Positions 16,054-25,700 of a stretch of 64,000 nt of DNA are shown one piece after another (position 1 is the first letter of the stretch; each line of letters opens with the position of its first letter). The stretch spans positions 62,001 to 126,000 of the IMG/VR virus record IMGVR_UViG_3300049460_000312. The stretch is one strand, 5' to 3'. Both the position numbers and the translations under genes were made by a program. The notes beneath the pieces were generated by a model. That model saw only the letters and a list, made by a program, of their open reading frames with translations, ran no database searches and had not been told where the DNA came from.

Positions 16054-17208
16054 TTACTTCGCGGCTTGGGCGCCCGAAGCGAAATCGGTCAGTTCCTTCA
16101 GCAGACGTGCCGAGTACGTCGCCGACAGATGCGTCGGGCTGAACCAGCGCACGTGTTGCGGATCACGATCCGAGAGACCTGCCATGTAAATCGCGATGCT
16201 ATCCGGTTCGAGGGTAAACGACCAGATCACAATCGTGCTTTGCAAACGCAACACCACACAGGCCGGGACCGAGTCACCGCCGAAGAAACCTGCCGGCAGG
16301 GTGGAACGGTCTTCAGCTGCGAGTTGCAGCGGATTGGCGCGCTTATACCACTGGAAGCCAGCCGAGCCCACCGTGATAATCCCGCGACCGTCAGGCAACC
16401 ACGGACCCGCAGCGAAGATGTCGAGCAGGGGCGAAGCCTGACCCAAGAGGATATCCACGCTGTTTTGCGGCGGGCGAGCCACTTGCAGTTCGCCCAGGGC
16501 CTTCACCGGGGGCAAGCCTGCAGAAGTCGATTGGATACCCAGATCCACCGGTGAGTGCATCGGCACACCACCGGACGAATGACCCATCGGTTCGTCATCG
16601 AGGCTGGCGAGTTGCTCGCGCCGGGCGGCCAGTTGATCTGCCGGTGTGCTGGCCAGTGCAGCGATTTCAGCCAGATGCGCTGCTGCAGCGGCACGTGCAC
16701 CGCTCACGGTCGGCGTACCATCGGGCATCGCAGCCGGGGCAACAGGCGGGATACTGCGCAACGGCGGTTCCGGTGTCAGATCGACGGGCGGCGTGATGTC
16801 GAGGGCTTCCACGGGCGGCGGACGACGCGAGGCAATGGCGGCATCGTGCGTGGCTTGACGCAGACGCGCGACCGCGGCTTCGACATCCACGGGTGCCGCT
16901 TCGTCAGCCGGCGCAACAGCCGTTTCGACGACATCTGACAGACCGACCGACTTCTTGTAGTTTTCGATGTGGTTGACGTAATAGCCTGCCATCGACGACA
17001 GGTTGTGCTGGATGTTCTGGATGCTGATCAAGCCTTCCTGCGTGAGAATCGTCGGGCAGGTGGCACCACCCGATTGCTGCCAGGTCACCGCGTCACGCAA
17101 GACGGTTTCGAGCACCTTGTCGGTGTTCTCCAGCGCCTTGGTGATAGCGTTGCTCAGGAACTGCAAACGACCCAGAACTGTTTGATGCGTGTTGTTCGTT
17201 TCGGACAT
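16054..17208 (-). CDS. Hypothetical protein
   Basis: ORF directly downstream of the helicase, with a Pro/Ala-rich central linker. Confidence 0.65.
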   Translation of the reverse strand: MSETNNTHQTVLGRLQFLSNAITKALENTDKVLETVLRDAVTWQQSGGATCPTILTQEGLISIQNIQHNLSSMAGYYVNHIENYKKSVGLSDVVETAVAPADEAAPVDVEAAVARLRQATHDAAIASRRPPPVEALDITPPVDLTPEPPLRSIPPVAPAAMPDGTPTVSGARAAAAAHLAEIAALASTPADQLAARREQLASLDDEPMGHSSGGVPMHSPVDLGIQSTSAGLPPVKALGELQVARPPQNSVDILLGQASPLLDIFAAGPWLPDGRGIITVGSAGFQWYKRANPLQLAAEDRSTLPAGFFGGDSVPACVVLRLQSTIVIWSFTLEPDSIAIYMAGLSDRDPQHVRWFSPTHLSATYSARLLKELTDFASGAQAAK

Positions 17209-17253
17209 GATGAAAGAGAAGATGCCCAACGGAATCGCTTCCGTCAGGCTGGG

Positions 17254-18837
17254 TTAGTGGACAGTGGCGTTGCCTTGATGAAATACTTTCTCGCCCACGA
17301 TAAACGGCAGCGTGAGCAGGTGACACTCTGCGGCTTTCTCAGCCAGCAGTAATTCCTTGCGGATGTGATACTCCATGTGCTTGGCGATGTCCTCACACGT
17401 GAAATACTCAAACTCCACATCGACGCCATCGATCTTGCGCAGACGACCAAAGCCCTGAATGTTGGCAGCCGAAGCATTGATGGCATTGGTCAGAATCACG
17501 GTAATAAGTCCCTTGATATCGTGACCGGTGCCTGCCGAGCCAATCGTTGAGACACAGACGGTGGCACTCATCAGGTTGTCGTACGGATCATCCTCCACGT
17601 AGCGCCGGACATCGAGGTCCGGATACCGGCGTTTCAGATAGTCCTTGATCGCTGTACACATCTGGATCGAGGCGGCGTAAATCAGACACTTCTGCCCAGG
17701 CTCGTAACGCGTTAAGAAGCGCTCCTGGAACCGCTCGTCAATGAAGTCCAGGTAATGCCGGAGCAGCCAGCTAAACCGGTTGCCAAAGAAGTTCTTCTCA
17801 AACGCCATGTGCGAGTAGTTCGCTGAACCCATCTCGGTCGTGCGCAACTGGTCACCGTGCTTGATCCGGTAACGCATCGCATACGACTTGACGTACTTGT
17901 CTTCCACCACCACCTTGCACCGTTCTTCCGGCGGGTAGGCGATTTCCTGCATCTTACGGATAAACTGGTCATCCGCAATCAGCGTGGCAGACAAAGAGAT
18001 GGACCACTCGATGTGGGTGTACAGGTCGATCTTGAAGTTGCAATGGAAGTCTTCGTGCACTTCATCGATGATACGCAGACCGGCCTGAATCACCTGACAG
18101 AACTGTTCAGGCAAACAGTCGTAGCCCAGATCCAGAATCGCATCGCCCTTCTGTTCATAAAGGTCGATATAGTTCTGGAACGTGCGGTTGGACACGAGGA
18201 TCGCTTTCGCCTCCAGCGTGCCTTCCTTGGCAGCCCGAATCACTTCCATCAACATGGCAGAGCCCTGCACGACAATCACGTCACGCGAAGGCGTCATCCC
18301 CAGCAACTCTTCCAAGTCACTCGGCCACTTCTTCAGATACTTCGGCTTCAGAAACGCAACAATGCGCTTATCCAGCTGCGACGCAAACCACGACGCCACA
18401 AAGGTCTTCCCCTTGCCTGGAGGAATCCCCACAAACTTACGTCGGGAAGGTTCAGTCGAGATGTTGTACTTATTGATCTCGACCTGATAGTCACGCGGTG
18501 TTTTCTCCTTGGTGATCTCGCAGTCAAGCTTGGCGGCTTCAACGTATCCGAATTCTTGCACAGTCCAGCCGTGCTCGGGTACGCCGGTGTCTGCGAGATA
18601 ATGCTGAAAAGCCTTCCACTGGCCAATGTGGAGACGGATGTGATTCTTGCGGACAACCTTCGCCGCAAACACCTTGACGGGACCACGCTTAAAGAAGCGC
18701 CCGACTTTGATCATGCCGAACTGGATATAGTTGCGGACAAATTTCTCCACAATGGCCTGTCCAGACGGGGACATGTTCCGCACCACAAAGTGATGCGAGA
18801 ACCGGTCGACCTCGAAATACTTGCTCACAGCACTCAT
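17254..18837 (-). CDS. Superfamily 2 DExH helicase (phiKZ gp75-like)
   Basis: Walker A GIPPGKGKT, DEVH, SLSAT, STIGSAGTGHDI and motif VI QGFGRLRK. Confidence 0.9.
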   Translation of the reverse strand: MSAVSKYFEVDRFSHHFVVRNMSPSGQAIVEKFVRNYIQFGMIKVGRFFKRGPVKVFAAKVVRKNHIRLHIGQWKAFQHYLADTGVPEHGWTVQEFGYVEAAKLDCEITKEKTPRDYQVEINKYNISTEPSRRKFVGIPPGKGKTFVASWFASQLDKRIVAFLKPKYLKKWPSDLEELLGMTPSRDVIVVQGSAMLMEVIRAAKEGTLEAKAILVSNRTFQNYIDLYEQKGDAILDLGYDCLPEQFCQVIQAGLRIIDEVHEDFHCNFKIDLYTHIEWSISLSATLIADDQFIRKMQEIAYPPEERCKVVVEDKYVKSYAMRYRIKHGDQLRTTEMGSANYSHMAFEKNFFGNRFSWLLRHYLDFIDERFQERFLTRYEPGQKCLIYAASIQMCTAIKDYLKRRYPDLDVRRYVEDDPYDNLMSATVCVSTIGSAGTGHDIKGLITVILTNAINASAANIQGFGRLRKIDGVDVEFEYFTCEDIAKHMEYHIRKELLLAEKAAECHLLTLPFIVGEKVFHQGNATVH

Positions 18838-19036
18838 GTTTTCTCGCCTTCATACAGAACTCTATGGGATGTGTCTCGCAGGTAAGAAAATATGGGCTGT
18901 TGTTTAACCAGGCACATGACAGTCATGACCCCAGCAATCCGGACACGGGCCCGGTACTCGGGTATCGTATCGCGGACAGTAATAACGACGCTGGGGTGGC
19001 GGCTCCTGTTGCTGTACTGGTTGGGGCTTGGCTTCG

Positions 19037-19669
19037 TTAGGCGTCACTTTCGGTTTCCTCCCGATCCATGTGCGCGTGCATGATACAACTCCACACGCGA
19101 CGATTACCGTCATCGCCGTCATTGCGATAAGCGACGAGATCGCCATTACGGTTGTAACACTTCACCAGACGTCCGGTGCATTCGGCAATGGCCAGTGCCG
19201 CTGCTTTCGAACGCGACTGACCCATATTGCAATGGACCACGATGGTCGGAGCGTCCTTGTGCTTGAGCACGAAGTCGACGATGGCTTCTCCGTCTTCGAT
19301 CCGACACCAGCGGTCCCCCTGCGCCTCGCTACGAATGCTCACGTGGTCATGGAAGCCACGGTGCAATACTTCGACATCATCCGGCTTGCGGAAGAACGTA
19401 GGCGGCTCTGCGTGCGTGTCAGTGATGCTGATGATCGCATCACTCGAACGATACGGATAGCCGGAGGCATCGTTGCGCGACATGAAGATCACGCGCTTCG
19501 TGCCGGGTGCGTCTGGAGCGGGCTTTTGTTTGTTCTCTTCAGCCTTAGCATTCTCTTGCGGACTCAAGAAAGCCTTCTCAGGTTTGGCTGGGTCGTGGAA
19601 CGCCACCCCCGCACGTTCAGCCTGACGCTTCTGTGCAGCGCGTTGTTCATATTTGCTAATCTTCGGCAT
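19037..19669 (-). CDS. Protein-tyrosine/dual-specificity phosphatase-like protein (CX5R)
   Basis: VVHCNMGQSRSKAAALAI P-loop, upstream AIISITD and an FHD acid loop; basic N-terminal extension. Confidence 0.8.
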   Translation of the reverse strand: MPKISKYEQRAAQKRQAERAGVAFHDPAKPEKAFLSPQENAKAEENKQKPAPDAPGTKRVIFMSRNDASGYPYRSSDAIISITDTHAEPPTFFRKPDDVEVLHRGFHDHVSIRSEAQGDRWCRIEDGEAIVDFVLKHKDAPTIVVHCNMGQSRSKAAALAIAECTGRLVKCYNRNGDLVAYRNDGDDGNRRVWSCIMHAHMDREETESDA

Positions 19670-19704
19670 GGTTGTATCCAAAAGAAAAAAGAGGCAACAC
19701 AAAA

Positions 19705-19724
19705 CCCGGAGGTTTCCCTCCGGG
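19705..19724 (-). terminator. Intrinsic terminator after the Lys/Ala-rich protein gene
   Basis: CCCGGAGG-N4-CCTCCGGG followed by T-rich sequence on the minus strand. Confidence 0.75.
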
Positions 19725-19739
19725 CTTCGCGACGCGAGA

Positions 19740-20753
19740 TTACTTCTTGATCGGATCACGGTAGTTGAAGATGAGGGCAGCGAGTTGCAGGTCACCATTC
19801 AGTTTGCCGCCTGCCGCACGGATTTCCTTCACCAGTGCGTCGAAGCGGTTCAGCAGGTCGAGGTTCTTTTTCGCTTCGTCCGTAGCAGTCAGTGACTTGA
19901 TGAGCGCCGGCGAGGCGTTGATAGCTTCCGTGACCTTTGGCTGAGCTTTCTCGGCGGCGAAATGCTGCGCCGTTTGCTTGGTGAGCACCGAGATTTCGCT
20001 GGTGGAAACTTCGCCGTCGTTCATGGCGGCGTTGTGACCGATTTCGATGACGAAGCCTTCAGCAGCGGCCTTAGCGATCAGTTGCGTGGCTTCGAATGTC
20101 AGGTCCGCACGCATTTGCGTTTGTTCCTGCGTGAGTTCGCCCGTCGGCTTGACACGCTTGGCGGCTGCTTTTTTGGCCGGAGCTTTCTTCGCTGCTTCAG
20201 CCGGCTTGACCGGAGCCTTCAGTGCATCTGCCGCCTTCTTGATGGCCTTCTTCGCGGCCGGTGCGATGTCCGACTTCACCGCATCGACCTTCGGCTTGGC
20301 GACCTTCTTGGCGGGCGTAGCACGCACTTCGGCAGCCTTCTGTTCCGTGTCCGCCGGCAGCTTCACCAGTGCGCGCTTATTGCTGCGCGAGACGCGCTTG
20401 ACGGTCGACGGTGTCGCGACCTTGGCGGCCGGATCGGGTACGGCGTTGGCCTTGTCGAACAGTGCCTGCTTCTTCGCAGCACGACTCTTCGGTGCTGGCT
20501 TGTCTGCGGGGATGTCGATCTTCTGCGCAGTGACAACAGCTTTCGCAGCCGCGCCTGCCGGATCGTTCACGAGACCCGTCTGCGAAGCCGGCGTGGCGCG
20601 CGTCACGCGCTTCACAGCGGGTTTCTTCACAGGCACCGAGGTCTTGTCAGCGGTCTTGGCCATCGCGGGCTTCGGGAGCTTGTCCGTAGCTTGTTGTGCG
20701 GTGACGCGTTTAGCGACTTTCGAACCGAATTGTTTCTTTGCTGCAGTGGCCAT
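19740..20753 (-). CDS. Histone H1/AlgP-like Lys-Ala-Pro-rich basic protein
   Basis: About 200 aa of KKPAVK / AAKKAIKKAA / KKAPAKKAAAK repeats, then a globular C-terminal region; AAGGAG RBS. Confidence 0.7.
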   Translation of the reverse strand: MATAAKKQFGSKVAKRVTAQQATDKLPKPAMAKTADKTSVPVKKPAVKRVTRATPASQTGLVNDPAGAAAKAVVTAQKIDIPADKPAPKSRAAKKQALFDKANAVPDPAAKVATPSTVKRVSRSNKRALVKLPADTEQKAAEVRATPAKKVAKPKVDAVKSDIAPAAKKAIKKAADALKAPVKPAEAAKKAPAKKAAAKRVKPTGELTQEQTQMRADLTFEATQLIAKAAAEGFVIEIGHNAAMNDGEVSTSEISVLTKQTAQHFAAEKAQPKVTEAINASPALIKSLTATDEAKKNLDLLNRFDALVKEIRAAGGKLNGDLQLAALIFNYRDPIKK

Positions 20754-20821
20754 TTTTCTCTCCTTTAGAGCTATGTGGCGTGGTGATATTTGTTCTCTGC
20801 AAAGGATGCAGATGGGGGTAA

Positions 20822-21262
20822 TTAATTCCAGTGATACTCTAGCCGGTTGCGTCGATACTCACCTTTGGTCACATCGCTGAGATGAAAACCATAACGCTTG
20901 ACGAACACCCGACTGTAATCATGAAACAGTTCTTCAGCTACGGTGCAGTGGGGCATCTCGGAGTCCAGTTGCTCCAGCATCCGGTCAATGAGTTTGACAC
21001 CGAGCCCACTACCCTGGTGCGACTCCTGCACTCGCACACAGCGCAGCTTGGTTTCATGGGCGTTGCGCTTACCGAGCGCCAGACCCACGACCCGTTCATT
21101 CTCTTTGGCCAGCAGGAGAATGTCTTTGCCGACCACAATCCCCGGCATCACGCTGTTGGTGTACCAGTATTCAAACTCCGGGTAGTAGGTGTCCAATCCC
21201 CGTAACAGCTTCAGACCGACTAGCGCTTCGGTAAAGGTGTGACCACGCACAAACGTCAGCAT
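20822..21262 (-). CDS. GNAT-family acetyltransferase
   Basis: KLRCVRVQESHQGSGLGVKLI is the GNAT motif A (Q/RxxGxG); RYGF near the C-terminus; GAGGAG RBS. Confidence 0.85.
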   Translation of the reverse strand: MLTFVRGHTFTEALVGLKLLRGLDTYYPEFEYWYTNSVMPGIVVGKDILLLAKENERVVGLALGKRNAHETKLRCVRVQESHQGSGLGVKLIDRMLEQLDSEMPHCTVAEELFHDYSRVFVKRYGFHLSDVTKGEYRRNRLEYHWN

Positions 21263-21311
21263 CTTTTCTCCTCATCAGCATAAGACGGGGACCGAAGTCC
21301 CCGCCGTACGC

Positions 21312-23342
21312 TTAGTAGTTGCCGCGACCGCCAGCCCGCTTGTCCTCGTGATCTGCTACCTCACGCGGCATCAGGATGCCATCGAACGGATGGTTCGGTC
21401 GGTTACGCAAGGCAAACGACTCCGGTGCGTAAATCCCTTCCGCATGATGTTCGTAAGCCATAAACGGCGCCAACGAACGATACATGATGATGTTTCTCAG
21501 CACGCCCAGGCCGTTTTCCGTCCACGGCTTCGGCATCGAGTAATCGTAACGTTCAGCAGAACGGATCAACGCCCCACGCAACGTCACGGACACCACGGCG
21601 AGATTCACCCGGGCTTTCCGGTTCATCAGCTCCACCAGCTCCACGAGGGTCGAGGCAGGGTCGACCAGGCGGTCGCGCTCCACCACTTCCTTCACGGTCG
21701 ACTCCAGCACCTTCGCGATGTCACGCGAGTGGTCCGACATACTAAAGTCACGCATCGGCAACGACGCAAACGGTACATTCCACTTCCAGCCTTTCAGCGG
21801 AATCACGTAACAGCCCGTTTCCTCATCAACCGTATAATTCACGGCCTTGATGTGTTCCAGGAACTCGTACGTGAGAAAGGGCAGACGCTTGCCATCGCGC
21901 AGACTGATTTCCTCGCCATCGCCATTCGCTTGCCGGATCGTGACTTCCGAAAGCTCTGACATGCGCGATTCCATCAACACCCGCACGTTATCCACGTTGT
22001 AGATGTCCGACAGGTTCGGCGCAGCTTCACAGTCAAACAGCAGACTGAGATCGCCGTTCTTGCCGTTCTGCTTAAGCGTATCCGCAAACAGATAGCGATT
22101 GCCGTCGGTGGAGAGCTTGACGAACAACTGCGTGCGCGCATCGATCGAGGCGCCCTTGATGCTCTTGGACGAATCCAAGTGCTTCGTGGACAACACGCCC
22201 TGCGCGTTCTTTTCTGTCACGTGTGTGCAGTTCGCATGACCGATGTTGCTGTTGGACGGAATCAACTCGCTCATCAGCCCGTAACACGTCGAGCAGATGC
22301 CGTTTGGATCGGGCGACGCGCAGTACAGCACATTGCGCAGCTTGATGTTCTTGCCGATCAGGTACTTGTCATCGCGATGCACCGTCTTGAGCATGCCATC
22401 GTCATCGACGTAGTGGTTGCCGTCGAGGATTTCCAGATCGCTCGGCTTGTCCTCGTGCTTGCCCTGTACCCGCCAGTTAAGAAAGCGGGTCGTACCACAG
22501 TCGGTATGGTGAAGTGTTTCCACCCCCATGTCCATGGTGCGCAGCTTGCGCGAGAAATACTCCGTATCCTGCAGGTCGCCCTTGGAGGCATTCAAGGCCT
22601 TCGCTGCCGAGCGCGACTCGATCTGGATGTCCCGTTGTGAGCGGATACCCTGATAATAGCCGCGCATGATCGGAATGCCGAAGCGTTCGTTGTTGATGTC
22701 GGTCAAGAAACCCCGCGGGCCCAGACACTGATGGACCTGCTTGCTCGACACCAGTCCCGAGCGATACAGTTTCGACAATGCATTGTCACGCAGTTCCGGC
22801 TTGCGCTGCAACACCTGATCGATCGTGTAGTAGATGTCCGCAATCGACTCTTCGTCGGGTTTGGCCCGCTCGTACGACGCCACCACATCGGGGTCCTTGA
22901 ACACCGCGTGGAAGTCGAACAGATTCAGCGACGTGATATATGCGCCGAGATAGCGCACCATGTCGTTGTAATGCTGGTTCGAGATGTTGTACGCCAGCTC
23001 CGCCAGTTCAAAGCGCAGATCCACCATGCGCTCGACCGTATGGGTCGCGCTCAGATAATCCGCACAATCCCAGAGGATGTTCTGGATCAGCTTGATGTGC
23101 GTTTCCATGCCGAGCCGTCGCCCATTCAGGACCGCCGCGACATGATGCTTCTTCAGGATCGGTAGTCCCGGATAGTTCGCATGGAATTCCCAGAAATACC
23201 GGCTGTAGATGACCTCCTTGTGGTTGGTCAACAATTCCTCGCCGTCATCGAAGACGAGGATGAGGGGTCCGGCGAGCGAGCGCCAGGTATCCTCGATACT
23301 CAGGCCGAGAACGGTCCGAGCGGCAAGACGTTTTAGTGACAT
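21312..23342 (-). CDS. rpoC: Non-virion RNA polymerase beta' subunit, C-terminal part (phiKZ gp74-like)
   Basis: QCLGPRG, bridge-helix-like KGDLQDTEYFSRKL, DCGT...RNVLYC...GICSTCYG zinc site, trigger-loop-like NAQGVLSTKH. Confidence 0.9.
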   Translation of the reverse strand: MSLKRLAARTVLGLSIEDTWRSLAGPLILVFDDGEELLTNHKEVIYSRYFWEFHANYPGLPILKKHHVAAVLNGRRLGMETHIKLIQNILWDCADYLSATHTVERMVDLRFELAELAYNISNQHYNDMVRYLGAYITSLNLFDFHAVFKDPDVVASYERAKPDEESIADIYYTIDQVLQRKPELRDNALSKLYRSGLVSSKQVHQCLGPRGFLTDINNERFGIPIMRGYYQGIRSQRDIQIESRSAAKALNASKGDLQDTEYFSRKLRTMDMGVETLHHTDCGTTRFLNWRVQGKHEDKPSDLEILDGNHYVDDDGMLKTVHRDDKYLIGKNIKLRNVLYCASPDPNGICSTCYGLMSELIPSNSNIGHANCTHVTEKNAQGVLSTKHLDSSKSIKGASIDARTQLFVKLSTDGNRYLFADTLKQNGKNGDLSLLFDCEAAPNLSDIYNVDNVRVLMESRMSELSEVTIRQANGDGEEISLRDGKRLPFLTYEFLEHIKAVNYTVDEETGCYVIPLKGWKWNVPFASLPMRDFSMSDHSRDIAKVLESTVKEVVERDRLVDPASTLVELVELMNRKARVNLAVVSVTLRGALIRSAERYDYSMPKPWTENGLGVLRNIIMYRSLAPFMAYEHHAEGIYAPESFALRNRPNHPFDGILMPREVADHEDKRAGGRGNY

Positions 23343-23399: not shown

Positions 23400-25700
23400 T
23401 CACGCGACAAACGTGATTGCCGACGGCTTCGGCTCCAGTTCCTGGTACGGCGCATACGTAAACTTCCATCCGTTACAGAGAGCCAAGTGCTTCACCAGCT
23501 CCAACGGTTTCGCGTTCCCCAGCGGAATCTTGCTGCGATCCACGAGCATATCGATGTTGGTTGGCTTGTCGGCCCGCAGGATGTTGTACACGCCCATGCG
23601 GTGTGCGGCGATATTATTGTTGCGATCAATCAACTCCGCCATCGGACGCCACCCCATATACGAGGTGCCAATGGCAGTTTCCGTTTCACCCCAGGCCCGG
23701 ATCGCTTGCTGGCGCCACGGCGACGCATGCTTATCCTGGTTGTTGATGTGCGACAGAATGCCGAAGTTTTGCAGCTTGCCCGAGGACACCGAAGTCCAGT
23801 CATCACCGGTCTTCTCCAGCAGGATGAAGTACACCTCGCCGACGATGATCTTTTCCTGGGTGGTGACGAACTTGCCCGTATGGTCACGATACGTAATGTG
23901 ACCAATCTGTGGCATGAAGTGCTTCTGGATTTCGTCGACGACGTCAGGCAGCTCCGGATCGTTGTTGCTCGGATGGTAGATGTAGATGCCATCCTCCAGG
24001 AACGAGGTCATGTGTTCATGAATCAACCCCGCTGCGGCTTCGCGCTCATAGAACTCAGCCTGCTCCGGACTCACGGTGCGCATGAAGTGCATGAAGCGAT
24101 CCCAGGCGGCCACGGCTGCCGGTTCCTGCTTCTTGTAAGCAATCTCCACCCGTGTTTTCTCCGCGAGACTGAGCTTCTGACCGTGCACGCCGGGATACTG
24201 CACTCCAAACAAGTTACAGAACTCCTTGTTCAGATCCCGGCCTGCTGCGTTAAAGCCCTGCTCGTAGAGACGACCCAGATTCTGCCGTGACACGGTAGCA
24301 CCGCCGTCCATCGCGATATGCGCGCGATTGCCGAACTCGTCCACCGGCATGTCTTCCTTCGGCACAATCTTCACCACCACGCCCTTACCACCCCAGCAGT
24401 CGGTGATCTTGTAGCCTTCCGTCGGTGTCGCTTCATACTCGACCACGAACTCGATGGTAAAGTCATCCATCGGGGAGGCCCGGTAGATCATCTGCACACG
24501 CTGTTCTTCGTTGATGGCTTCCTGTTGCGTCACCGCATACGCATGCTTGAGCAGGTTCTTGAAGTTGTGCGAGACCTTGTAACGGCCTTTAGGCTTATTC
24601 GCCTTCATCACGTTCGACTGACGCAGCACTTCGCGATAAAACACGCGTGCGGCCTGGTCGTACTTCAATGCCTGATCGTTACAGATGCTCGGCGCAAACG
24701 GTGCCCGGGATGCATCATGGCTCACGCGAATGTCGATCACCCGACCGCGGCTCATCACCTGACCGGTTTCCCGATCGGTTTTGGCCGACGGCACATACGT
24801 GAGCTTGTCGAACACGTAGTTCACTTCGCGAGAAGCTGTAGTCGACATTTCCACCGCCGAGTAGACATCGCTGTAACTGCGCAACGCCATCAGCAGGCCA
24901 TCGGGTCGGACATAATCGCCAATGTCCGGGAACGGCTTATAAATCGTTTCGTCCCCGTACAGGTTCAGCGGGAAGTGCGTCGAGCCATATGCCACCGTGC
25001 GCTTTTCATACTTGTGAATCTTCAGCCACGGTACTGCCTCGTCCGAGAGCAAGACACCGTCCTCAGCCACTTCCGGGAAGCTGCCAAAGACGACATTCAA
25101 GTTAATACCGTAACAGTAATTGCCATCCGGGCGTTTGGACGGCGAATCCTGCAAGATGGTATCGGCGGGCAGCATCGAGCCGCGTGAACCCGGCGTGGGC
25201 TGACGCAGCTGGCGAGCCTTTTCGGTATTCTTCAGCGGGAAGCCGAAATACTGGTGGTTGGAGAAATACTCCCGCATCGAAATACAGTCGACTTCACTTT
25301 CCCTGCCCGGCCCTTCATCCGGGTATTCGACAATCAGCATCGTTTCAGGGTTGTGGCGAATTGCATCCGTGCCCACGACTCTGGTGTTATAAAACGGGAT
25401 CATGGCCAAGATCTCGCAGTCACGTTCGACTTTCGTCGAGAACGTGGCTTTACCGTACTGGATCTCGGCCCCGGTTTGAATCCGTCGCGGTGTGGACTTC
25501 TCGAATACCAGGCACTGGGAAGTGTGGCTGGCGCCGAACATCTGCTTACGTGAAGCGGAGACTGTGCCGTCAAACGGCGACAAGCTCATCACGTTAGCCA
25601 ACTCGGGATAGAGTTGATTCGGCTCGTAGTGATAGTTCCAGACCGACGAAAGCGCTTGGGTCAGTGTGGTGTTACTGACACTTGTGTTGTCCTCTGCCAT
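23400..25700 (-). CDS. rpoB: Non-virion RNA polymerase beta subunit, C-terminal part (phiKZ gp71-73-like, uninterrupted)
   Basis: SRKQM, EDGVLLS, GYKITDCWGGKGVV (equivalent to GDK...HGNKG), RQNLGRLYE, YFILLEK and AWGETE (equivalent to RFGEME). Confidence 0.92.
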   Translation of the reverse strand: MAEDNTSVSNTTLTQALSSVWNYHYEPNQLYPELANVMSLSPFDGTVSASRKQMFGASHTSQCLVFEKSTPRRIQTGAEIQYGKATFSTKVERDCEILAMIPFYNTRVVGTDAIRHNPETMLIVEYPDEGPGRESEVDCISMREYFSNHQYFGFPLKNTEKARQLRQPTPGSRGSMLPADTILQDSPSKRPDGNYCYGINLNVVFGSFPEVAEDGVLLSDEAVPWLKIHKYEKRTVAYGSTHFPLNLYGDETIYKPFPDIGDYVRPDGLLMALRSYSDVYSAVEMSTTASREVNYVFDKLTYVPSAKTDRETGQVMSRGRVIDIRVSHDASRAPFAPSICNDQALKYDQAARVFYREVLRQSNVMKANKPKGRYKVSHNFKNLLKHAYAVTQQEAINEEQRVQMIYRASPMDDFTIEFVVEYEATPTEGYKITDCWGGKGVVVKIVPKEDMPVDEFGNRAHIAMDGGATVSRQNLGRLYEQGFNAAGRDLNKEFCNLFGVQYPGVHGQKLSLAEKTRVEIAYKKQEPAAVAAWDRFMHFMRTVSPEQAEFYEREAAAGLIHEHMTSFLEDGIYIYHPSNNDPELPDVVDEIQKHFMPQIGHITYRDHTGKFVTTQEKIIVGEVYFILLEKTGDDWTSVSSGKLQNFGILSHINNQDKHASPWRQQAIRAWGETETAIGTSYMGWRPMAELIDRNNNIAAHRMGVYNILRADKPTNIDMLVDRSKIPLGNAKPLELVKHLALCNGWKFTYAPYQELEPKPSAITFVA

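What the first reader, a model, noticed from the sequence alone, without database searches (positions are those of the whole stretch)
19037..21262. GNAT acetyltransferase, H1-like Lys-rich protein and CX5R phosphatase inserted between nvRNAP beta' and the helicase
Seen: three co-oriented genes between the gp74-like and gp75-like genes, which are numbered consecutively in phiKZ. They encode a GNAT, a protein with about 200 aa of KKxPAK/AAKK repeats, and a PTP/DSP-family phosphatase. Hairpins separate them, so they need not form one operon. Inference: a writer/substrate/eraser-like set that could tune DNA compaction inside the phage nucleus through lysine acetylation and dephosphorylation, a chromatin-like regulatory layer. 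Alternatively, the GNAT and phosphatase are independent anti-defence enzymes.
Basis: inference. Interest (0 to 1): 0.65.

Follow-up and report, generated by a model that had tools for sequence, protein, structure and literature searches.

The report
Accessory gene island in Ralstonia jumbo phage
Between the RNA-polymerase and helicase genes of a nucleus-forming Ralstonia jumbo phage lies a lineage-specific island of four small genes; the strongly basic disordered protein and the cysteine phosphatase travel together in relatives, but the acetyltransferase comes and goes independently, so the proposed "chromatin writer/substrate/eraser" set is not supported as a unit.

Summary
The genes are real and lie at the stated coordinates, all on the minus strand.
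- GNAT acetyltransferase, 20822-21262.
- A 337-aa protein, 19740-20753. Its first 205 residues are a K/A/P-rich disordered polycation (net +35). This is compositional bias, not true repeats.
- A DSP-fold Cys phosphatase, 19037-19669, with an invariant HCNxGQSRS loop.
It overlaps the phosphatase stop codon and is fused to the phosphatase in one relative.

The window comes from a complete 283-kb RP12-like (Ripduovirus-like, Chimalliviridae) phage from rhizosphere metagenomes. In 201phi2-1 and FLC9 the beta' and helicase genes are adjacent, so this is a clade-specific insertion.

Across about 12 related lineages the basic protein and the phosphatase stay together. The GNAT is present in only three of them. 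It is absent from the whole genomes of the closest isolates, FLC4-3B and FLC1-1B. It belongs to a conserved family found in many chimalliviruses that lack the basic protein, and in this window it is a different allele type from RP12's. The phage encodes no kinase and no sirtuin-type deacetylase.

Most likely this is an accessory island with a basic-protein/phosphatase/mini-protein core, where the basic protein is inferred to bind polyanions such as nucleic acid, plus an independent GNAT cassette. All functions are untested.

The parts
21312..23342 (-). nvRNAP beta' subunit gene (phiKZ gp74-like); upstream border of the island
   Evidence: phrog_3015 E 1.9e-198; 90% identical to FLC4-3B gp293 and 86% to RP12 ORF274
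21278..21311 (-). Strong RNA hairpin directly after the beta' stop codon
   Evidence: MFE -24.7 kcal/mol, z -4.47, 0 of 200 shuffles fold as well
20822..21262 (-). GNAT acetyltransferase, 146 aa, of the chimallivirus-wide family phrog_13728 (201phi2-1 gp209 type)
   Evidence: Pfam Acetyltransf_1 31.8 bits against cut-off 20.7. phrog_13728 E 1.2e-51. Motif A Q83-G-S-G-L-G88 with Q83 and G88 invariant. ESM Atlas model pTM 0.86, TM 0.9 to GNAT clusters. 23 phage records carry homologues.
20796..20812 (-). Weak hairpin in the spacer between the GNAT and the basic-protein gene
   Evidence: -10.6 kcal/mol for the spacer, z -2.46, 2 of 200 shuffles fold as well
20139..20753 (-). Basic-protein gene, codons 1-205: K/A/P-rich disordered polycationic region (net +35, pI 10.7). 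Hot spot of in-frame indels in natural populations.
   Evidence: Composition. No secondary structure predicted for residues 1-164 and pLDDT below 50. No tandem repeats. Population indels: 24-nt insertion behind 20225, 117-nt insertion near 20376-20431, skips between 20270 and 20376. Conserved short motifs in the family.
19740..20138 (-). Basic-protein gene, codons 206-337 plus stop: acidic C-terminal part (pI 5.4) made of small helix-plus-hairpin modules. The best conserved is LLNRFDALVKEIRAAGGKLNGDLQL..F.Y. The window copy lacks the last module that 99%-identical P0016 carries.
   Evidence: Alignments A2/A3. Low-confidence AF2 secondary structure: helices 209-231 and 282-313 plus hairpins. 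The A3 profile finds only 10 proteins among 1.84 billion representatives. Sequences of relatives.
19694..19735 (-). Intrinsic-terminator-like hairpin (CCCGGAGG-GAAA-CCTCCGGG core) followed by a U-rich tract, between the basic-protein gene and the phosphatase gene
   Evidence: -32.1 kcal/mol, z -4.92, 0 of 200 shuffles fold as well; sequence read
19037..19669 (-). Cys-based DSP/PTP-fold phosphatase, 210 aa. Residues 1-57 form a basic helical/disordered extension and residues 58-205 the catalytic domain. The P-loop H146-C147-N-M-G-Q-S-R153-S154 lies at 19208-19234.
   Evidence: Invariant HCNxGQSRSKAAA plus invariant D84, D108 and D126. AF2 pLDDT 82. VIA-align: STYX Z 8.5, DUSP28 8.3, slingshot-2 8.1, MKP-2 8.0, PTPMT1 7.9 over residues 58-205. 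phrog_34657 E 7e-64. Pfam DSPc only 17.1 bits against cut-off 33.5.
18904..19047 (-). Previously unnoticed 47-aa Cys-rich ORF (...YYCPRYDTRVPGPCPDCWGHDCHVPG). It has a GTG start behind a GGGAGGA Shine-Dalgarno sequence and overlaps the phosphatase stop by 11 nt. It is probably a small metal-binding partner of the phosphatase.
   Evidence: Sequence. The Cys motif is identical in FLC4-3B, FLC1-1B, L009 and L010, and is fused in frame to the phosphatase C-terminus in L011/L012 (P0006, 272 aa). No Pfam hit.
17254..18837 (-). SF2/RAD2-type helicase (phiKZ gp75-like); downstream border of the island
   Evidence: phrog_16 E 3.3e-29; 91% identical to FLC4-3B gp289; 43% to FLC9 gp368

Best explanation
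This is a lineage-specific accessory island inserted at the otherwise tight junction between the nvRNAP beta' gene and the helicase gene in Ripduovirus-like Ralstonia chimalliviruses. It is not one regulatory module.

Its stable core has two parts.
(a) A fast-evolving modular protein. Its N-terminal ~200 residues are a disordered polycation, and its C-terminus carries one to three small helix-plus-hairpin modules.
(b) Behind a terminator of its own, a VH1/DUSP-like cysteine phosphatase translationally coupled to a 47-aa Cys-rich mini-protein.

Inferred mechanism. The basic protein binds polyanions non-specifically through charge, most probably nucleic acid. The small modules give self-association or partner binding, so the protein acts as a bridging, coating or condensing factor. 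The phosphatase, with its mini-protein, hydrolyses a phospho-substrate through Cys147/Arg153 and is functionally tied to the basic protein, either as its substrate or as its recruiter. That tie rests only on the conserved linkage.

The GNAT is an independent, exchangeable cassette of a family conserved across chimalliviruses. Its substrate is therefore something common to those phages or hosts, not this hypervariable protein.

Shown: gene content, folds and motifs, the insertion, and the co-occurrence pattern. Inferred: all biochemical activities, polyanion binding, and the coupling between the basic protein and the phosphatase.
For: Insertion. Beta' and helicase are adjacent in 201phi2-1 and FLC9, and RSL2 has one unrelated gene between them.

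Core pair.
- The basic protein is directly followed by the phosphatase in the window, L009, L010, L008, FLC4-3B, FLC1-1B, L012, L016, L023 and L026.
- L013 has a non-basic variant in the same position.
- RP12, RP31 and L015 have only a hydrolase gene inserted between the two.
- The pair persists down to 43% phosphatase identity and 28% basic-protein identity.
- RP12 ORF270 is a short family member (K18 A24 P10 %; profile E 6e-10).

Polycation. Net +35 over 205 aa, predicted disordered. It tolerates in-frame indels in natural populations and module gain and loss. That is the behaviour expected of a composition-constrained binder. K/A/P-rich (PAKKA) tails of bacterial proteins bind DNA (M. smegmatis Ku, PMC3553676).

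Phosphatase. Invariant P-loop and DSP fold.

Mini-protein. Overlapping start and stop, its own Shine-Dalgarno sequence, and a fusion in L011/L012.

GNAT independence.
- Absent from the whole FLC4-3B and FLC1-1B genomes.
- Homologues in 23 records from 17 different phages, at other loci.
- No relative of the basic protein in 201phi2-1, RSL2 or FLC9.
- The window allele groups with the RSL2/201phi2-1/FLC9 type, whereas RP12 and L008 form a separate clade with 100/99 support.

No Pkinase and no SIR2 in the complete genome.
Against: - There is no direct evidence for nucleic-acid binding, for any enzymatic activity, or for localisation.
- The AF2 model of the basic protein is poor (mean pLDDT 39), so its modules have no assigned fold.
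- A strong terminator separates the basic-protein gene from the phosphatase gene, so they may be expressed separately.
- Adjacency among fairly close relatives can be simple descent.
- Two family members of the basic protein, in other jumbo-phage contigs (L024, L025), have no phosphatase within 5 kb.
- S/T-P motifs that could be phospho-sites are not conserved across the family.
- Where the GNAT is present in this clade it always sits immediately upstream of the basic-protein gene, in three lineages and with two allele types. That could reflect selection for linkage rather than an insertion hot spot.
- Most comparison loci are metagenomic fragments.
Confidence: 0.5

Rival explanations
1. The GNAT acetylates lysines of the basic protein and the phosphatase removes phosphates from it. 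Together they tune compaction of phage DNA inside the phage nucleus, as a chromatin-like layer.
For: Where the GNAT is present in this clade (window/L009/L010, L008, RP12/RP31) it lies immediately upstream of the basic-protein gene. The basic protein has 40 lysines in 205 residues. The phage belongs to the Chimalliviridae. The phosphatase is constantly linked to the basic protein.
Against: The closest isolates, FLC4-3B and FLC1-1B, have the basic protein and the phosphatase but no GNAT anywhere in the genome. L015, L016, L013 and L023 also lack it. GNAT orthologues are 52-58% conserved in phages without any relative of the basic protein. High GNAT conservation against a hypervariable proposed substrate (16-45% identity) argues for another substrate. 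The phage has no kinase and no deacetylase. There is no evidence on compartment or DNA binding.
Confidence: 0.08
2. There is no functional coupling at all. The beta'/helicase junction is a recombination hot spot that collects unrelated cargo. The GNAT and the phosphatase would be separate host-takeover or anti-defence enzymes, for example acetylating a host defence protein or reversing a host kinase signal. The basic protein would be a third, unrelated factor.
For: Island content varies between lineages: DUF8308-like gene, ORF273, PHA depolymerase, a 94-aa gene, GNAT present or absent. GNAT alleles have been exchanged. Hairpins or terminators flank the genes. The basic protein evolves very fast, as arms-race proteins do.
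Against: The basic-protein/phosphatase pair stays together while everything else in the island varies, down to about 43% and 28% identity. No similarity to any characterised anti-defence protein was found. PADLOC and anti-defence libraries were not searched.
Confidence: 0.22
3. The basic protein targets host storage granules or their tether to the nucleoid (PHB or polyphosphate), like PhaM, PhaF or AlgP. The island would be a host-metabolism module working with the PHA depolymerase seen in relatives.
For: RP12, RP31 and L015 carry an alpha/beta-hydrolase gene exactly between the basic-protein gene and the phosphatase gene; in RP12/RP31 it is annotated poly(3-hydroxyalkanoate) depolymerase, and in L015 it is a Pfam Abhydrolase_1/Hydrolase_4 gene at the same position and orientation whose homology to the RP12 gene was not tested. 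Ralstonia and Cupriavidus store PHB, and PhaM links granules to the nucleoid (PMC3556143).
Against: The window, FLC4-3B, L008 and L016 have no depolymerase. There is no phasin or PhaM-like domain (no Pfam hit at all). The depolymerase is on the opposite strand.
Confidence: 0.07
4. The basic protein is an internal virion protein packaged with the DNA to neutralise charge, and is ejected with it.
For: It is a strongly basic disordered protein, and jumbo phages package many internal proteins (general knowledge).
Against: None of the RP31 homologues (ORF265 phosphatase, ORF267 short basic protein, ORF268 GNAT) appears in the RP31 virion mass-spectrometry table of 32 proteins (PMC5468394 Table S3). 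That gel-band survey was not exhaustive. The gene lies among early-type polymerase and helicase genes rather than structural modules.
Confidence: 0.05

Closest known systems
Histone H1 C-terminal domain and bacterial H1-like K/A/P-rich proteins (chlamydial Hc1/Hc2, Pseudomonas AlgP, PhaF/PhaM tails, PAKKA tails of mycobacterial HupB and Ku)
   Same: A long disordered Lys/Ala/Pro-rich polycationic tract (K 19.5%, A 25%, P 10%, net +35 over 205 aa), expected to bind polyanions by charge. One relative (P0027) gives a sub-threshold Pfam HC2 hit. JGI's pipeline even labelled a 99%-identical protein 'HU-beta'.
   Different: There is no linker-histone winged-helix domain and no HU, phasin or HC2 domain (no Pfam hit). 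Lysine density is about half that of an H1 tail (from general knowledge). There is no real repeat unit. It carries novel small helix-plus-hairpin modules, found in only 10 representative proteins among 1.84 billion.
VH1-like / atypical dual-specificity phosphatases (DUSPs, vaccinia VH1, PTPMT1, archaeal and viral DSPs)
   Same: (I/V)VHCxxGxSRS P-loop with invariant Cys and Arg, and the DSP alpha/beta fold over residues 58-205 (Z 6.5-8.5).
   Different: Sequence similarity is confined to the P-loop (PDB profile E 0.006; Pfam DSPc 17.1 bits against 33.5). It has a 57-residue basic N-terminal extension and a coupled or fused Cys-rich mini-protein. The family is restricted to Ripduovirus-like phages (11 proteins in 5.8 billion), plus a weak hit in Pseudomonas phage D6. 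The substrate is unknown.
Chimallivirus GNAT family phrog_13728 (201phi2-1 gp209, RSL2 ORF020, RP12 ORF271)
   Same: A full-length member: 52-61% identity and all invariant motifs, including KLRCVRV and Q-x-x-G-x-G.
   Different: Only in Ripduovirus-like phages does it sit at the beta'/helicase junction. No member has a known substrate. The nearest solved structures are only weakly similar (serotonin N-acetyltransferase, E 0.017).

Membership tests
GNAT acetyltransferase superfamily | Profile match above the curated threshold | tested here: met
   Pfam Acetyltransf_1 31.8 bits (cut-off 20.7), Acetyltransf_7 30.3 (27), Acetyltransf_10 26.5 (23.6)
GNAT acetyltransferase superfamily | Motif A acetyl-CoA pyrophosphate-binding loop Q/R-x-x-G-x-G/A | tested here: met
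   Q83-G-S-G-L-G88; Q83 and G88 invariant in six phage homologues
GNAT acetyltransferase superfamily | GNAT fold | tested here: met
   ESM Atlas's own model pTM 0.86; TM 0.87-0.91 to GNAT clusters
GNAT acetyltransferase superfamily | Acetyl transfer to a defined acceptor | not testable with these tools
   Needs biochemistry; no equivalog-level NCBIfam match (best is rimI, 28 bits against 86)
Cys-based PTP/DSP phosphatase superfamily | Signature H-C-X5-R-(S/T) P-loop | tested here: met
   H146-C-N-M-G-Q-S-R153-S154; H, C, N, G, Q, S, R and S invariant in 11 homologues
Cys-based PTP/DSP phosphatase superfamily | DSP alpha/beta fold with the P-loop between a central strand and a helix | tested here: met
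   AF2 pLDDT 82. The top ~26 VIA-align rows are all PTP/DSP-fold chains, Z 6.5-8.5, 118-128 residues aligned. Z near 8 is only moderate, and Foldseek E-values are all above 0.003.
Cys-based PTP/DSP phosphatase superfamily | Profile match above the curated threshold (Pfam DSPc) | tested here: not met
   17.1 bits against 33.5; only 26 residues around the P-loop align
Cys-based PTP/DSP phosphatase superfamily | General-acid Asp on a loop upstream of the Cys | tested here: inconclusive
   D84, D108 (F-H-D) and D126 are invariant; which one, if any, is the general acid was not resolved
Linker histone H1/H5 | Winged-helix globular domain (Pfam Linker_histone) | tested here: not met
   No Pfam family at E <= 0.1 for the 337-aa protein, nor for P0016 at E <= 1
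Linker histone H1/H5 | K/A/P-rich basic tail with S/T-P-x-K motifs | tested here: inconclusive
   The composition is similar but less lysine-dense. There is a single TPAK motif, and such motifs are absent from several family members.
Bacterial histone H1-like HC2 (PF07382) / HU | Profile match | tested here: not met
   No hit for the window protein. Relative P0027 scores 26.8 bits against cut-off 40. JGI's 'HU-beta' label on P0016 is not backed by any HU domain hit.
   Basic protein plus phosphatase occur without the GNAT in FLC4-3B and FLC1-1B (whole genomes) and in L013, L015, L016 and L023. The GNAT occurs without either in 201phi2-1, RSL2 and FLC9.
   No Pkinase and no SIR2 match in the complete 283-kb genome. 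Other kinase and deacetylase families were not searched.

The most novel reading that the evidence does not exclude
The basic protein is a genuine chromatin- or condensate-forming factor of the phage nucleus. In this reading it is a polycationic scaffold that coats or bridges phage DNA or nascent RNA next to the nvRNAP. Its charge would be tuned by host-kinase phosphorylation, reversed by the linked phosphatase/mini-protein pair, and in some lineages additionally by GNAT acetylation. That would be the first post-translationally regulated 'histone-like' layer described in a bacteriophage.
Probability: 0.08. Interest if true: 0.85.

Novelty: new variant of a known kind. Interest (0 to 1): 0.4.

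Why it matters
Nucleus-forming phages enclose their DNA in a protein shell, but almost nothing is known about proteins that organise the DNA or RNA inside it.

This analysis defines three things:
- a small, clade-specific family of polycationic disordered proteins with novel mini-modules;
- its constant partner, a divergent DSP-fold phosphatase with a Cys-rich mini-protein;
- an acetyltransferase that is shown not to be part of that unit.

This turns a speculative three-gene 'chromatin' story into a narrower, testable pair. Cultivable relatives provide natural controls: RP12 carries the GNAT, while FLC4-3B and FLC1-1B lack it.

It also corrects annotations. The mini-ORF is missed or mis-framed in FLC4-3B, and RP12 ORF270 can now be recognised as a family member. 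If the functions turn out to be ordinary host-takeover activities, the region is simply a variable accessory island.

Tried and rejected
- AF2 on the full basic protein with a 10-sequence alignment gave mean pLDDT 39, so no fold search was attempted.
- ESM Atlas feature search with the C-terminal half of P0016 gave no usable hit.
- Foldseek against the PDB with the phosphatase model gave no match at E <= 0.001 and mixed ATPase and DSP rows. VIA-align wide was needed.
- Complex prediction on the phosphatase (residues 50-210) plus the 46-aa Cys-rich ORF product (first, GTG-encoded, residue omitted) returned no verdict (score 0.00). This is not evidence either way.
- Scans of IMG/VR and of metagenome contigs with the phosphatase profile added only RP12 itself and two short contigs.
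- The sigma-70 promoter and simple terminator scan was at shuffle level and missed the two strong hairpins.
- tblastn with the basic protein missed RP12 ORF270 because of low-complexity filtering. A profile search found it.
- Literature searches for histone-like or lysine-rich proteins, acetyltransferases or phosphatases in chimalliviruses found nothing on these genes.
- No RNA-seq run holds the region, so expression and transcript ends could not be examined.
- The long form of the phosphatase ORF (start at 19798) was rejected. It overlaps the upstream gene and terminator, and homologues start at the internal Met.
- A rhodanese/Cdc25 reading of the CX5R protein (JGI label on P0013, Pfam Rhodanese E 0.07) was rejected because the fold matches are DSPs.


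Full report
WHAT IS THERE

On the minus strand of the window, the ORF listing and the sequence itself show the following order:
- nvRNAP beta (23400-25700)
- nvRNAP beta' (21312-23342)
- a 146-aa gene (20822-21262)
- a 337-aa gene (19740-20753)
- a 210-aa gene (19037-19669)
- a 47-aa ORF (18904-19047)
- an SF2 helicase (17254-18837)

The flanking genes are securely identified: phrog_3015 at E 2e-198, phrog_3295 at E 2e-237, and phrog_16 at E 3e-29.

The window is bases 62001-126000 of a complete 283,373-bp virus record with direct terminal repeats. Its nearest isolates are Ralstonia phages FLC4-3B and FLC1-1B (85% nucleotide identity), then RP12 and RP31. RP12's genus, Ripduovirus, is placed in the Chimalliviridae in the taxonomy copy. 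Near-identical DNA occurs in several rhizosphere and soil metagenomes, and no RNA run holds it.

THE GNAT

It passes three Pfam GNAT models above threshold and matches phrog_13728 at E 1e-51. It has the Q-x-x-G-x-G acetyl-CoA loop. The Atlas model (pTM 0.86) superposes on GNAT clusters at TM about 0.9.

Homologues at 50-61% identity exist in 23 phage records: RSL2, RSF1, FLC8, FLC9, 201phi2-1, Viktualia, Kc263, AH04, AH06, Proteus phage 10, Phosso and others. In those phages the gene lies elsewhere. In 201phi2-1, for example, it sits between homologues of phiKZ gp125 and gp126. Its neighbours there are not basic proteins. No substrate can be assigned. The best NCBIfam and PDB similarities are generic.

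THE BASIC PROTEIN

Residues 1-205 are 25% Ala, 19.5% Lys and 10% Pro, with pI 10.7 and net charge +35. Residues 206-337 are acidic, with pI 5.4.

- TRF finds nothing meaningful.
- The best internal similarity equals that of shuffled sequence.
- KKxPAK occurs once.

AF2 predicts no structure for residues 1-164 and only low-confidence helices and hairpins afterwards, with mean pLDDT 39. There is no Pfam, PHROG or NCBIfam family for it.

Homologues are very few. The word-indexed search of 5.8 billion proteins finds 8. A profile search of 1.84 billion representatives finds 10. The family is modular:
- Conserved short motifs in the basic part: KTADKTSVPVKKPA, TPASQTGLVNDPAGA and DIAPAAKKAIKKAADAL.
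- A conserved module: LL.RFDA.VKEIRAAGG.LNGDL.L..L.F.Y.
- One or more helix-plus-strand modules of the type A..LI..AK..GW.L.I...G...KLYETK.

The window copy ends before the last module, whereas the 99%-identical P0016 (387 aa) and P0015 (426 aa) carry it. RP12 ORF270 (144 aa; K 18%, A 24%, P 10%) is a minimal member, consisting of a basic tract plus the last module.

In rhizosphere metagenome contigs, indels are confined to the basic tract; the two whose length is known are in frame. There is a 24-nt insertion behind 20225 and a 117-nt insertion near 20376-20431.

It is the fastest-evolving gene of the region. Identity to relatives is 16-45%, against 79-90% for beta'.

THE PHOSPHATASE

The P-loop HCNMGQSRSKAAA is invariant in 11 homologues, as are D84, D108 and D126. 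The AF2 model (pLDDT 82) aligns over residues 58-205 with DSP/PTP-fold chains in essentially all of the top 26 rows. These include STYX (Z 8.5), DUSP28 (8.3), slingshot-2 (8.1), MKP-2 (8.0) and PTPMT1 (7.9). Those Z values are moderate. Sequence similarity to known DSPs is limited to the P-loop.

I therefore file it as a divergent member of the Cys-based DSP superfamily with unknown substrate. The 'SRS' P-loop resembles protein-directed DUSPs more than RNA triphosphatases; this comparison is from established knowledge and was not tested. The family is confined to Ripduovirus-like phages, plus a weak hit in Pseudomonas phage D6.

A FOURTH GENE

A 47-aa ORF starts at a GTG nine bases after GGGAGGA and overlaps the phosphatase stop by 11 nt. 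It ends in YYCPRYDTRVPGPCPDCWGHDCHVPG. That peptide is identical in FLC4-3B, FLC1-1B, L009 and L010. In L011/L012 it is fused in frame to the phosphatase (P0006, 272 aa).

This gene fusion, together with the translational coupling, suggests a small, probably metal-binding, partner of the phosphatase. A complex prediction gave no verdict.

IS IT AN INSERTION?

Yes. Beta' and helicase are adjacent in 201phi2-1 (gp130/gp131, annotated as homologues of phiKZ gp74/gp75) and in FLC9. RSL2 has one unrelated 270-aa gene between them.

HAIRPINS

There is a strong hairpin after beta' (-24.7 kcal/mol, z -4.5). There is a canonical terminator-like hairpin with a U tract after the basic-protein gene (-32.1, z -4.9). 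The GNAT/basic-protein spacer has only a weak one, and there is none before the helicase.

Island content from beta' to helicase in each lineage:

| Lineage | Island content |
|---|---|
| window, L009, L010 | GNAT, basic protein, phosphatase, mini-ORF |
| L008 (beta' 83% identical) | DUF8308 gene, GNAT, basic protein, phosphatase |
| RP12, RP31 | two small genes, GNAT, short basic protein, PHA depolymerase (opposite strand), phosphatase |
| FLC4-3B, FLC1-1B | basic protein, phosphatase, mini-ORF |
| L015 | basic protein, hydrolase, phosphatase |
| L016 | 94-aa gene, basic protein, phosphatase |
| L023 | basic protein, phosphatase |
| L013 | a non-basic 297-aa variant, phosphatase |
| L026 | basic protein, phosphatase (upstream not sampled) |

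Sources.

FLC4-3B and FLC1-1B lack the GNAT genome-wide. 201phi2-1, RSL2 and FLC9 have the GNAT but no relative of the basic protein. Two family members of the basic protein in other jumbo-phage contigs (L024, L025) have neither enzyme within 5 kb.

In a GNAT tree, RP12 and L008 form one clade (68% identical, with a shared 3-aa deletion, support 100/99). The window allele sits with the RSL2/201phi2-1/FLC9 type. A 45-nt stretch of the window's GNAT gene is 93.5% identical to FLC9's. So the GNAT at this site has been exchanged or acquired more than once.

The complete genome has one GNAT, no Pkinase and no SIR2.

INTERPRETATION

The GNAT is not an obligate partner. Its strong conservation in phages without the basic protein points to a different, conserved substrate.

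The one observation that still favours some GNAT connection is position. Whenever the GNAT is present in this clade it lies immediately upstream of the basic-protein gene, with two allele types. This may be selection, or merely an insertion hot spot behind the beta' terminator.

I commit to the following reading, at about 0.5 confidence:
- The basic protein is an electrostatic polyanion binder, most likely of nucleic acid, with small association modules.
- The phosphatase, together with its mini-protein, is functionally linked to it.
- The GNAT is an independent cassette.

Alternatives are three unrelated takeover or anti-defence genes (about 0.22), the full triad (about 0.08), granule targeting suggested by the PHA depolymerase in relatives (about 0.07), and a packaged internal protein (about 0.05). 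On the last, the RP31 virion proteome lists none of the three homologues.

COMPARISON WITH WHAT IS KNOWN, AND NOVELTY

The GNAT is an ordinary member of a known phage family. The phosphatase is a divergent, clade-restricted DSP. The basic protein resembles H1-like K/A/P tails only in composition. It fails every domain-level membership test (H1, HC2, HU) and carries modules with no detectable relatives.

The genes were already deposited as 'hypothetical' in RP12 and FLC4-3B, and no paper in the library discusses them.

I rate the region as a new variant of a known kind (a phage-borne H1-like polycation with a dedicated phosphatase partner) and of moderate interest. All biochemistry remains to be done.

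Noticed in passing
window 18904-19047 (-); L001 4894-5037 region: A conserved 47-aa Cys-rich ORF overlaps the phosphatase stop. In FLC4-3B the deposited annotation (gp290, L001 4824-4958) is in a different frame and misses this peptide. In L011/L012 the peptide is fused to the phosphatase.
   Followed up: yes
L002 4369-5184 (+) (RP12 ORF269); L015 1710-2534 (-): RP12/RP31 (poly(3-hydroxyalkanoate) depolymerase) and L015 (Pfam alpha/beta hydrolase; homology to the RP12 gene not tested) carry a hydrolase gene on the opposite strand, exactly between the basic-protein and phosphatase genes. It is absent from the window. It hints at a link to host PHB metabolism.
   Followed up: partly
window 21029-21073 (GNAT gene): A 45-nt stretch is 93.5% identical to the GNAT gene of Burkholderia phage FLC9 (H6). 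The window's GNAT groups with the RSL2/201phi2-1/FLC9 type rather than with RP12's. This suggests allele exchange between chimalliviruses of different hosts.
   Followed up: partly
window 19740-19760 (3' end of the basic-protein gene): The window's basic protein ends at ...NYRDPIKK and lacks the last ~50-aa module present in 99%-identical P0016 and in P0015. P0017 and P0018 share the short ending, so it is a circulating natural variant, not an assembly error.
   Followed up: yes
window 20150-20500: Metagenome contigs from four rhizosphere samples show indels only in the basic tract (24-nt and 117-nt in-frame insertions, plus several skips of undetermined net length). Many short unrelated contigs also match the AAKKA-coding stretches at 20157-20192 and 20246-20279. 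Similar K/A-coding sequence is therefore common in soil organisms.
   Followed up: partly
L008 6918-7376; L002 6213-6623 (RP12 ORF272): L008 carries a DUF8308 (PF26975) gene and RP12 a similar-sized gene (ORF272, no Pfam result; it shares an HFFLG motif with the L008 protein) upstream of the GNAT. The window has none. This is another variable island component of unknown function.
   Followed up: no
L024 5001-5816; L025 5001-5693: Family members of the basic protein (with the EIR[AS]AGG module) occur in other jumbo-phage contigs (243 kb and 12 kb). Their neighbours include T4_Y16D, thymidylate synthase and DHFR genes, and there is no phosphatase or GNAT nearby. The family is a little wider than the Ripduovirus-like clade.
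   Followed up: partly
window 16054-17229 (-): The 391-aa gene after the helicase (phrog_36639, unknown function) has a long Pro/Ala-rich, probably disordered, central region. It is conserved in position in all relatives.
   Followed up: no
window 19670-19700 (-): The phosphatase gene has no recognisable Shine-Dalgarno sequence. It starts 25-30 nt after the U-rich tail of the terminator hairpin. Its transcription and translation signals are unexplained.
   Followed up: no
P0016 (metagenome homologue): JGI's automatic name 'DNA-binding protein HU-beta' for a 99%-identical homologue is not supported by any HU domain match. It is probably a low-complexity artefact.
   Followed up: yes
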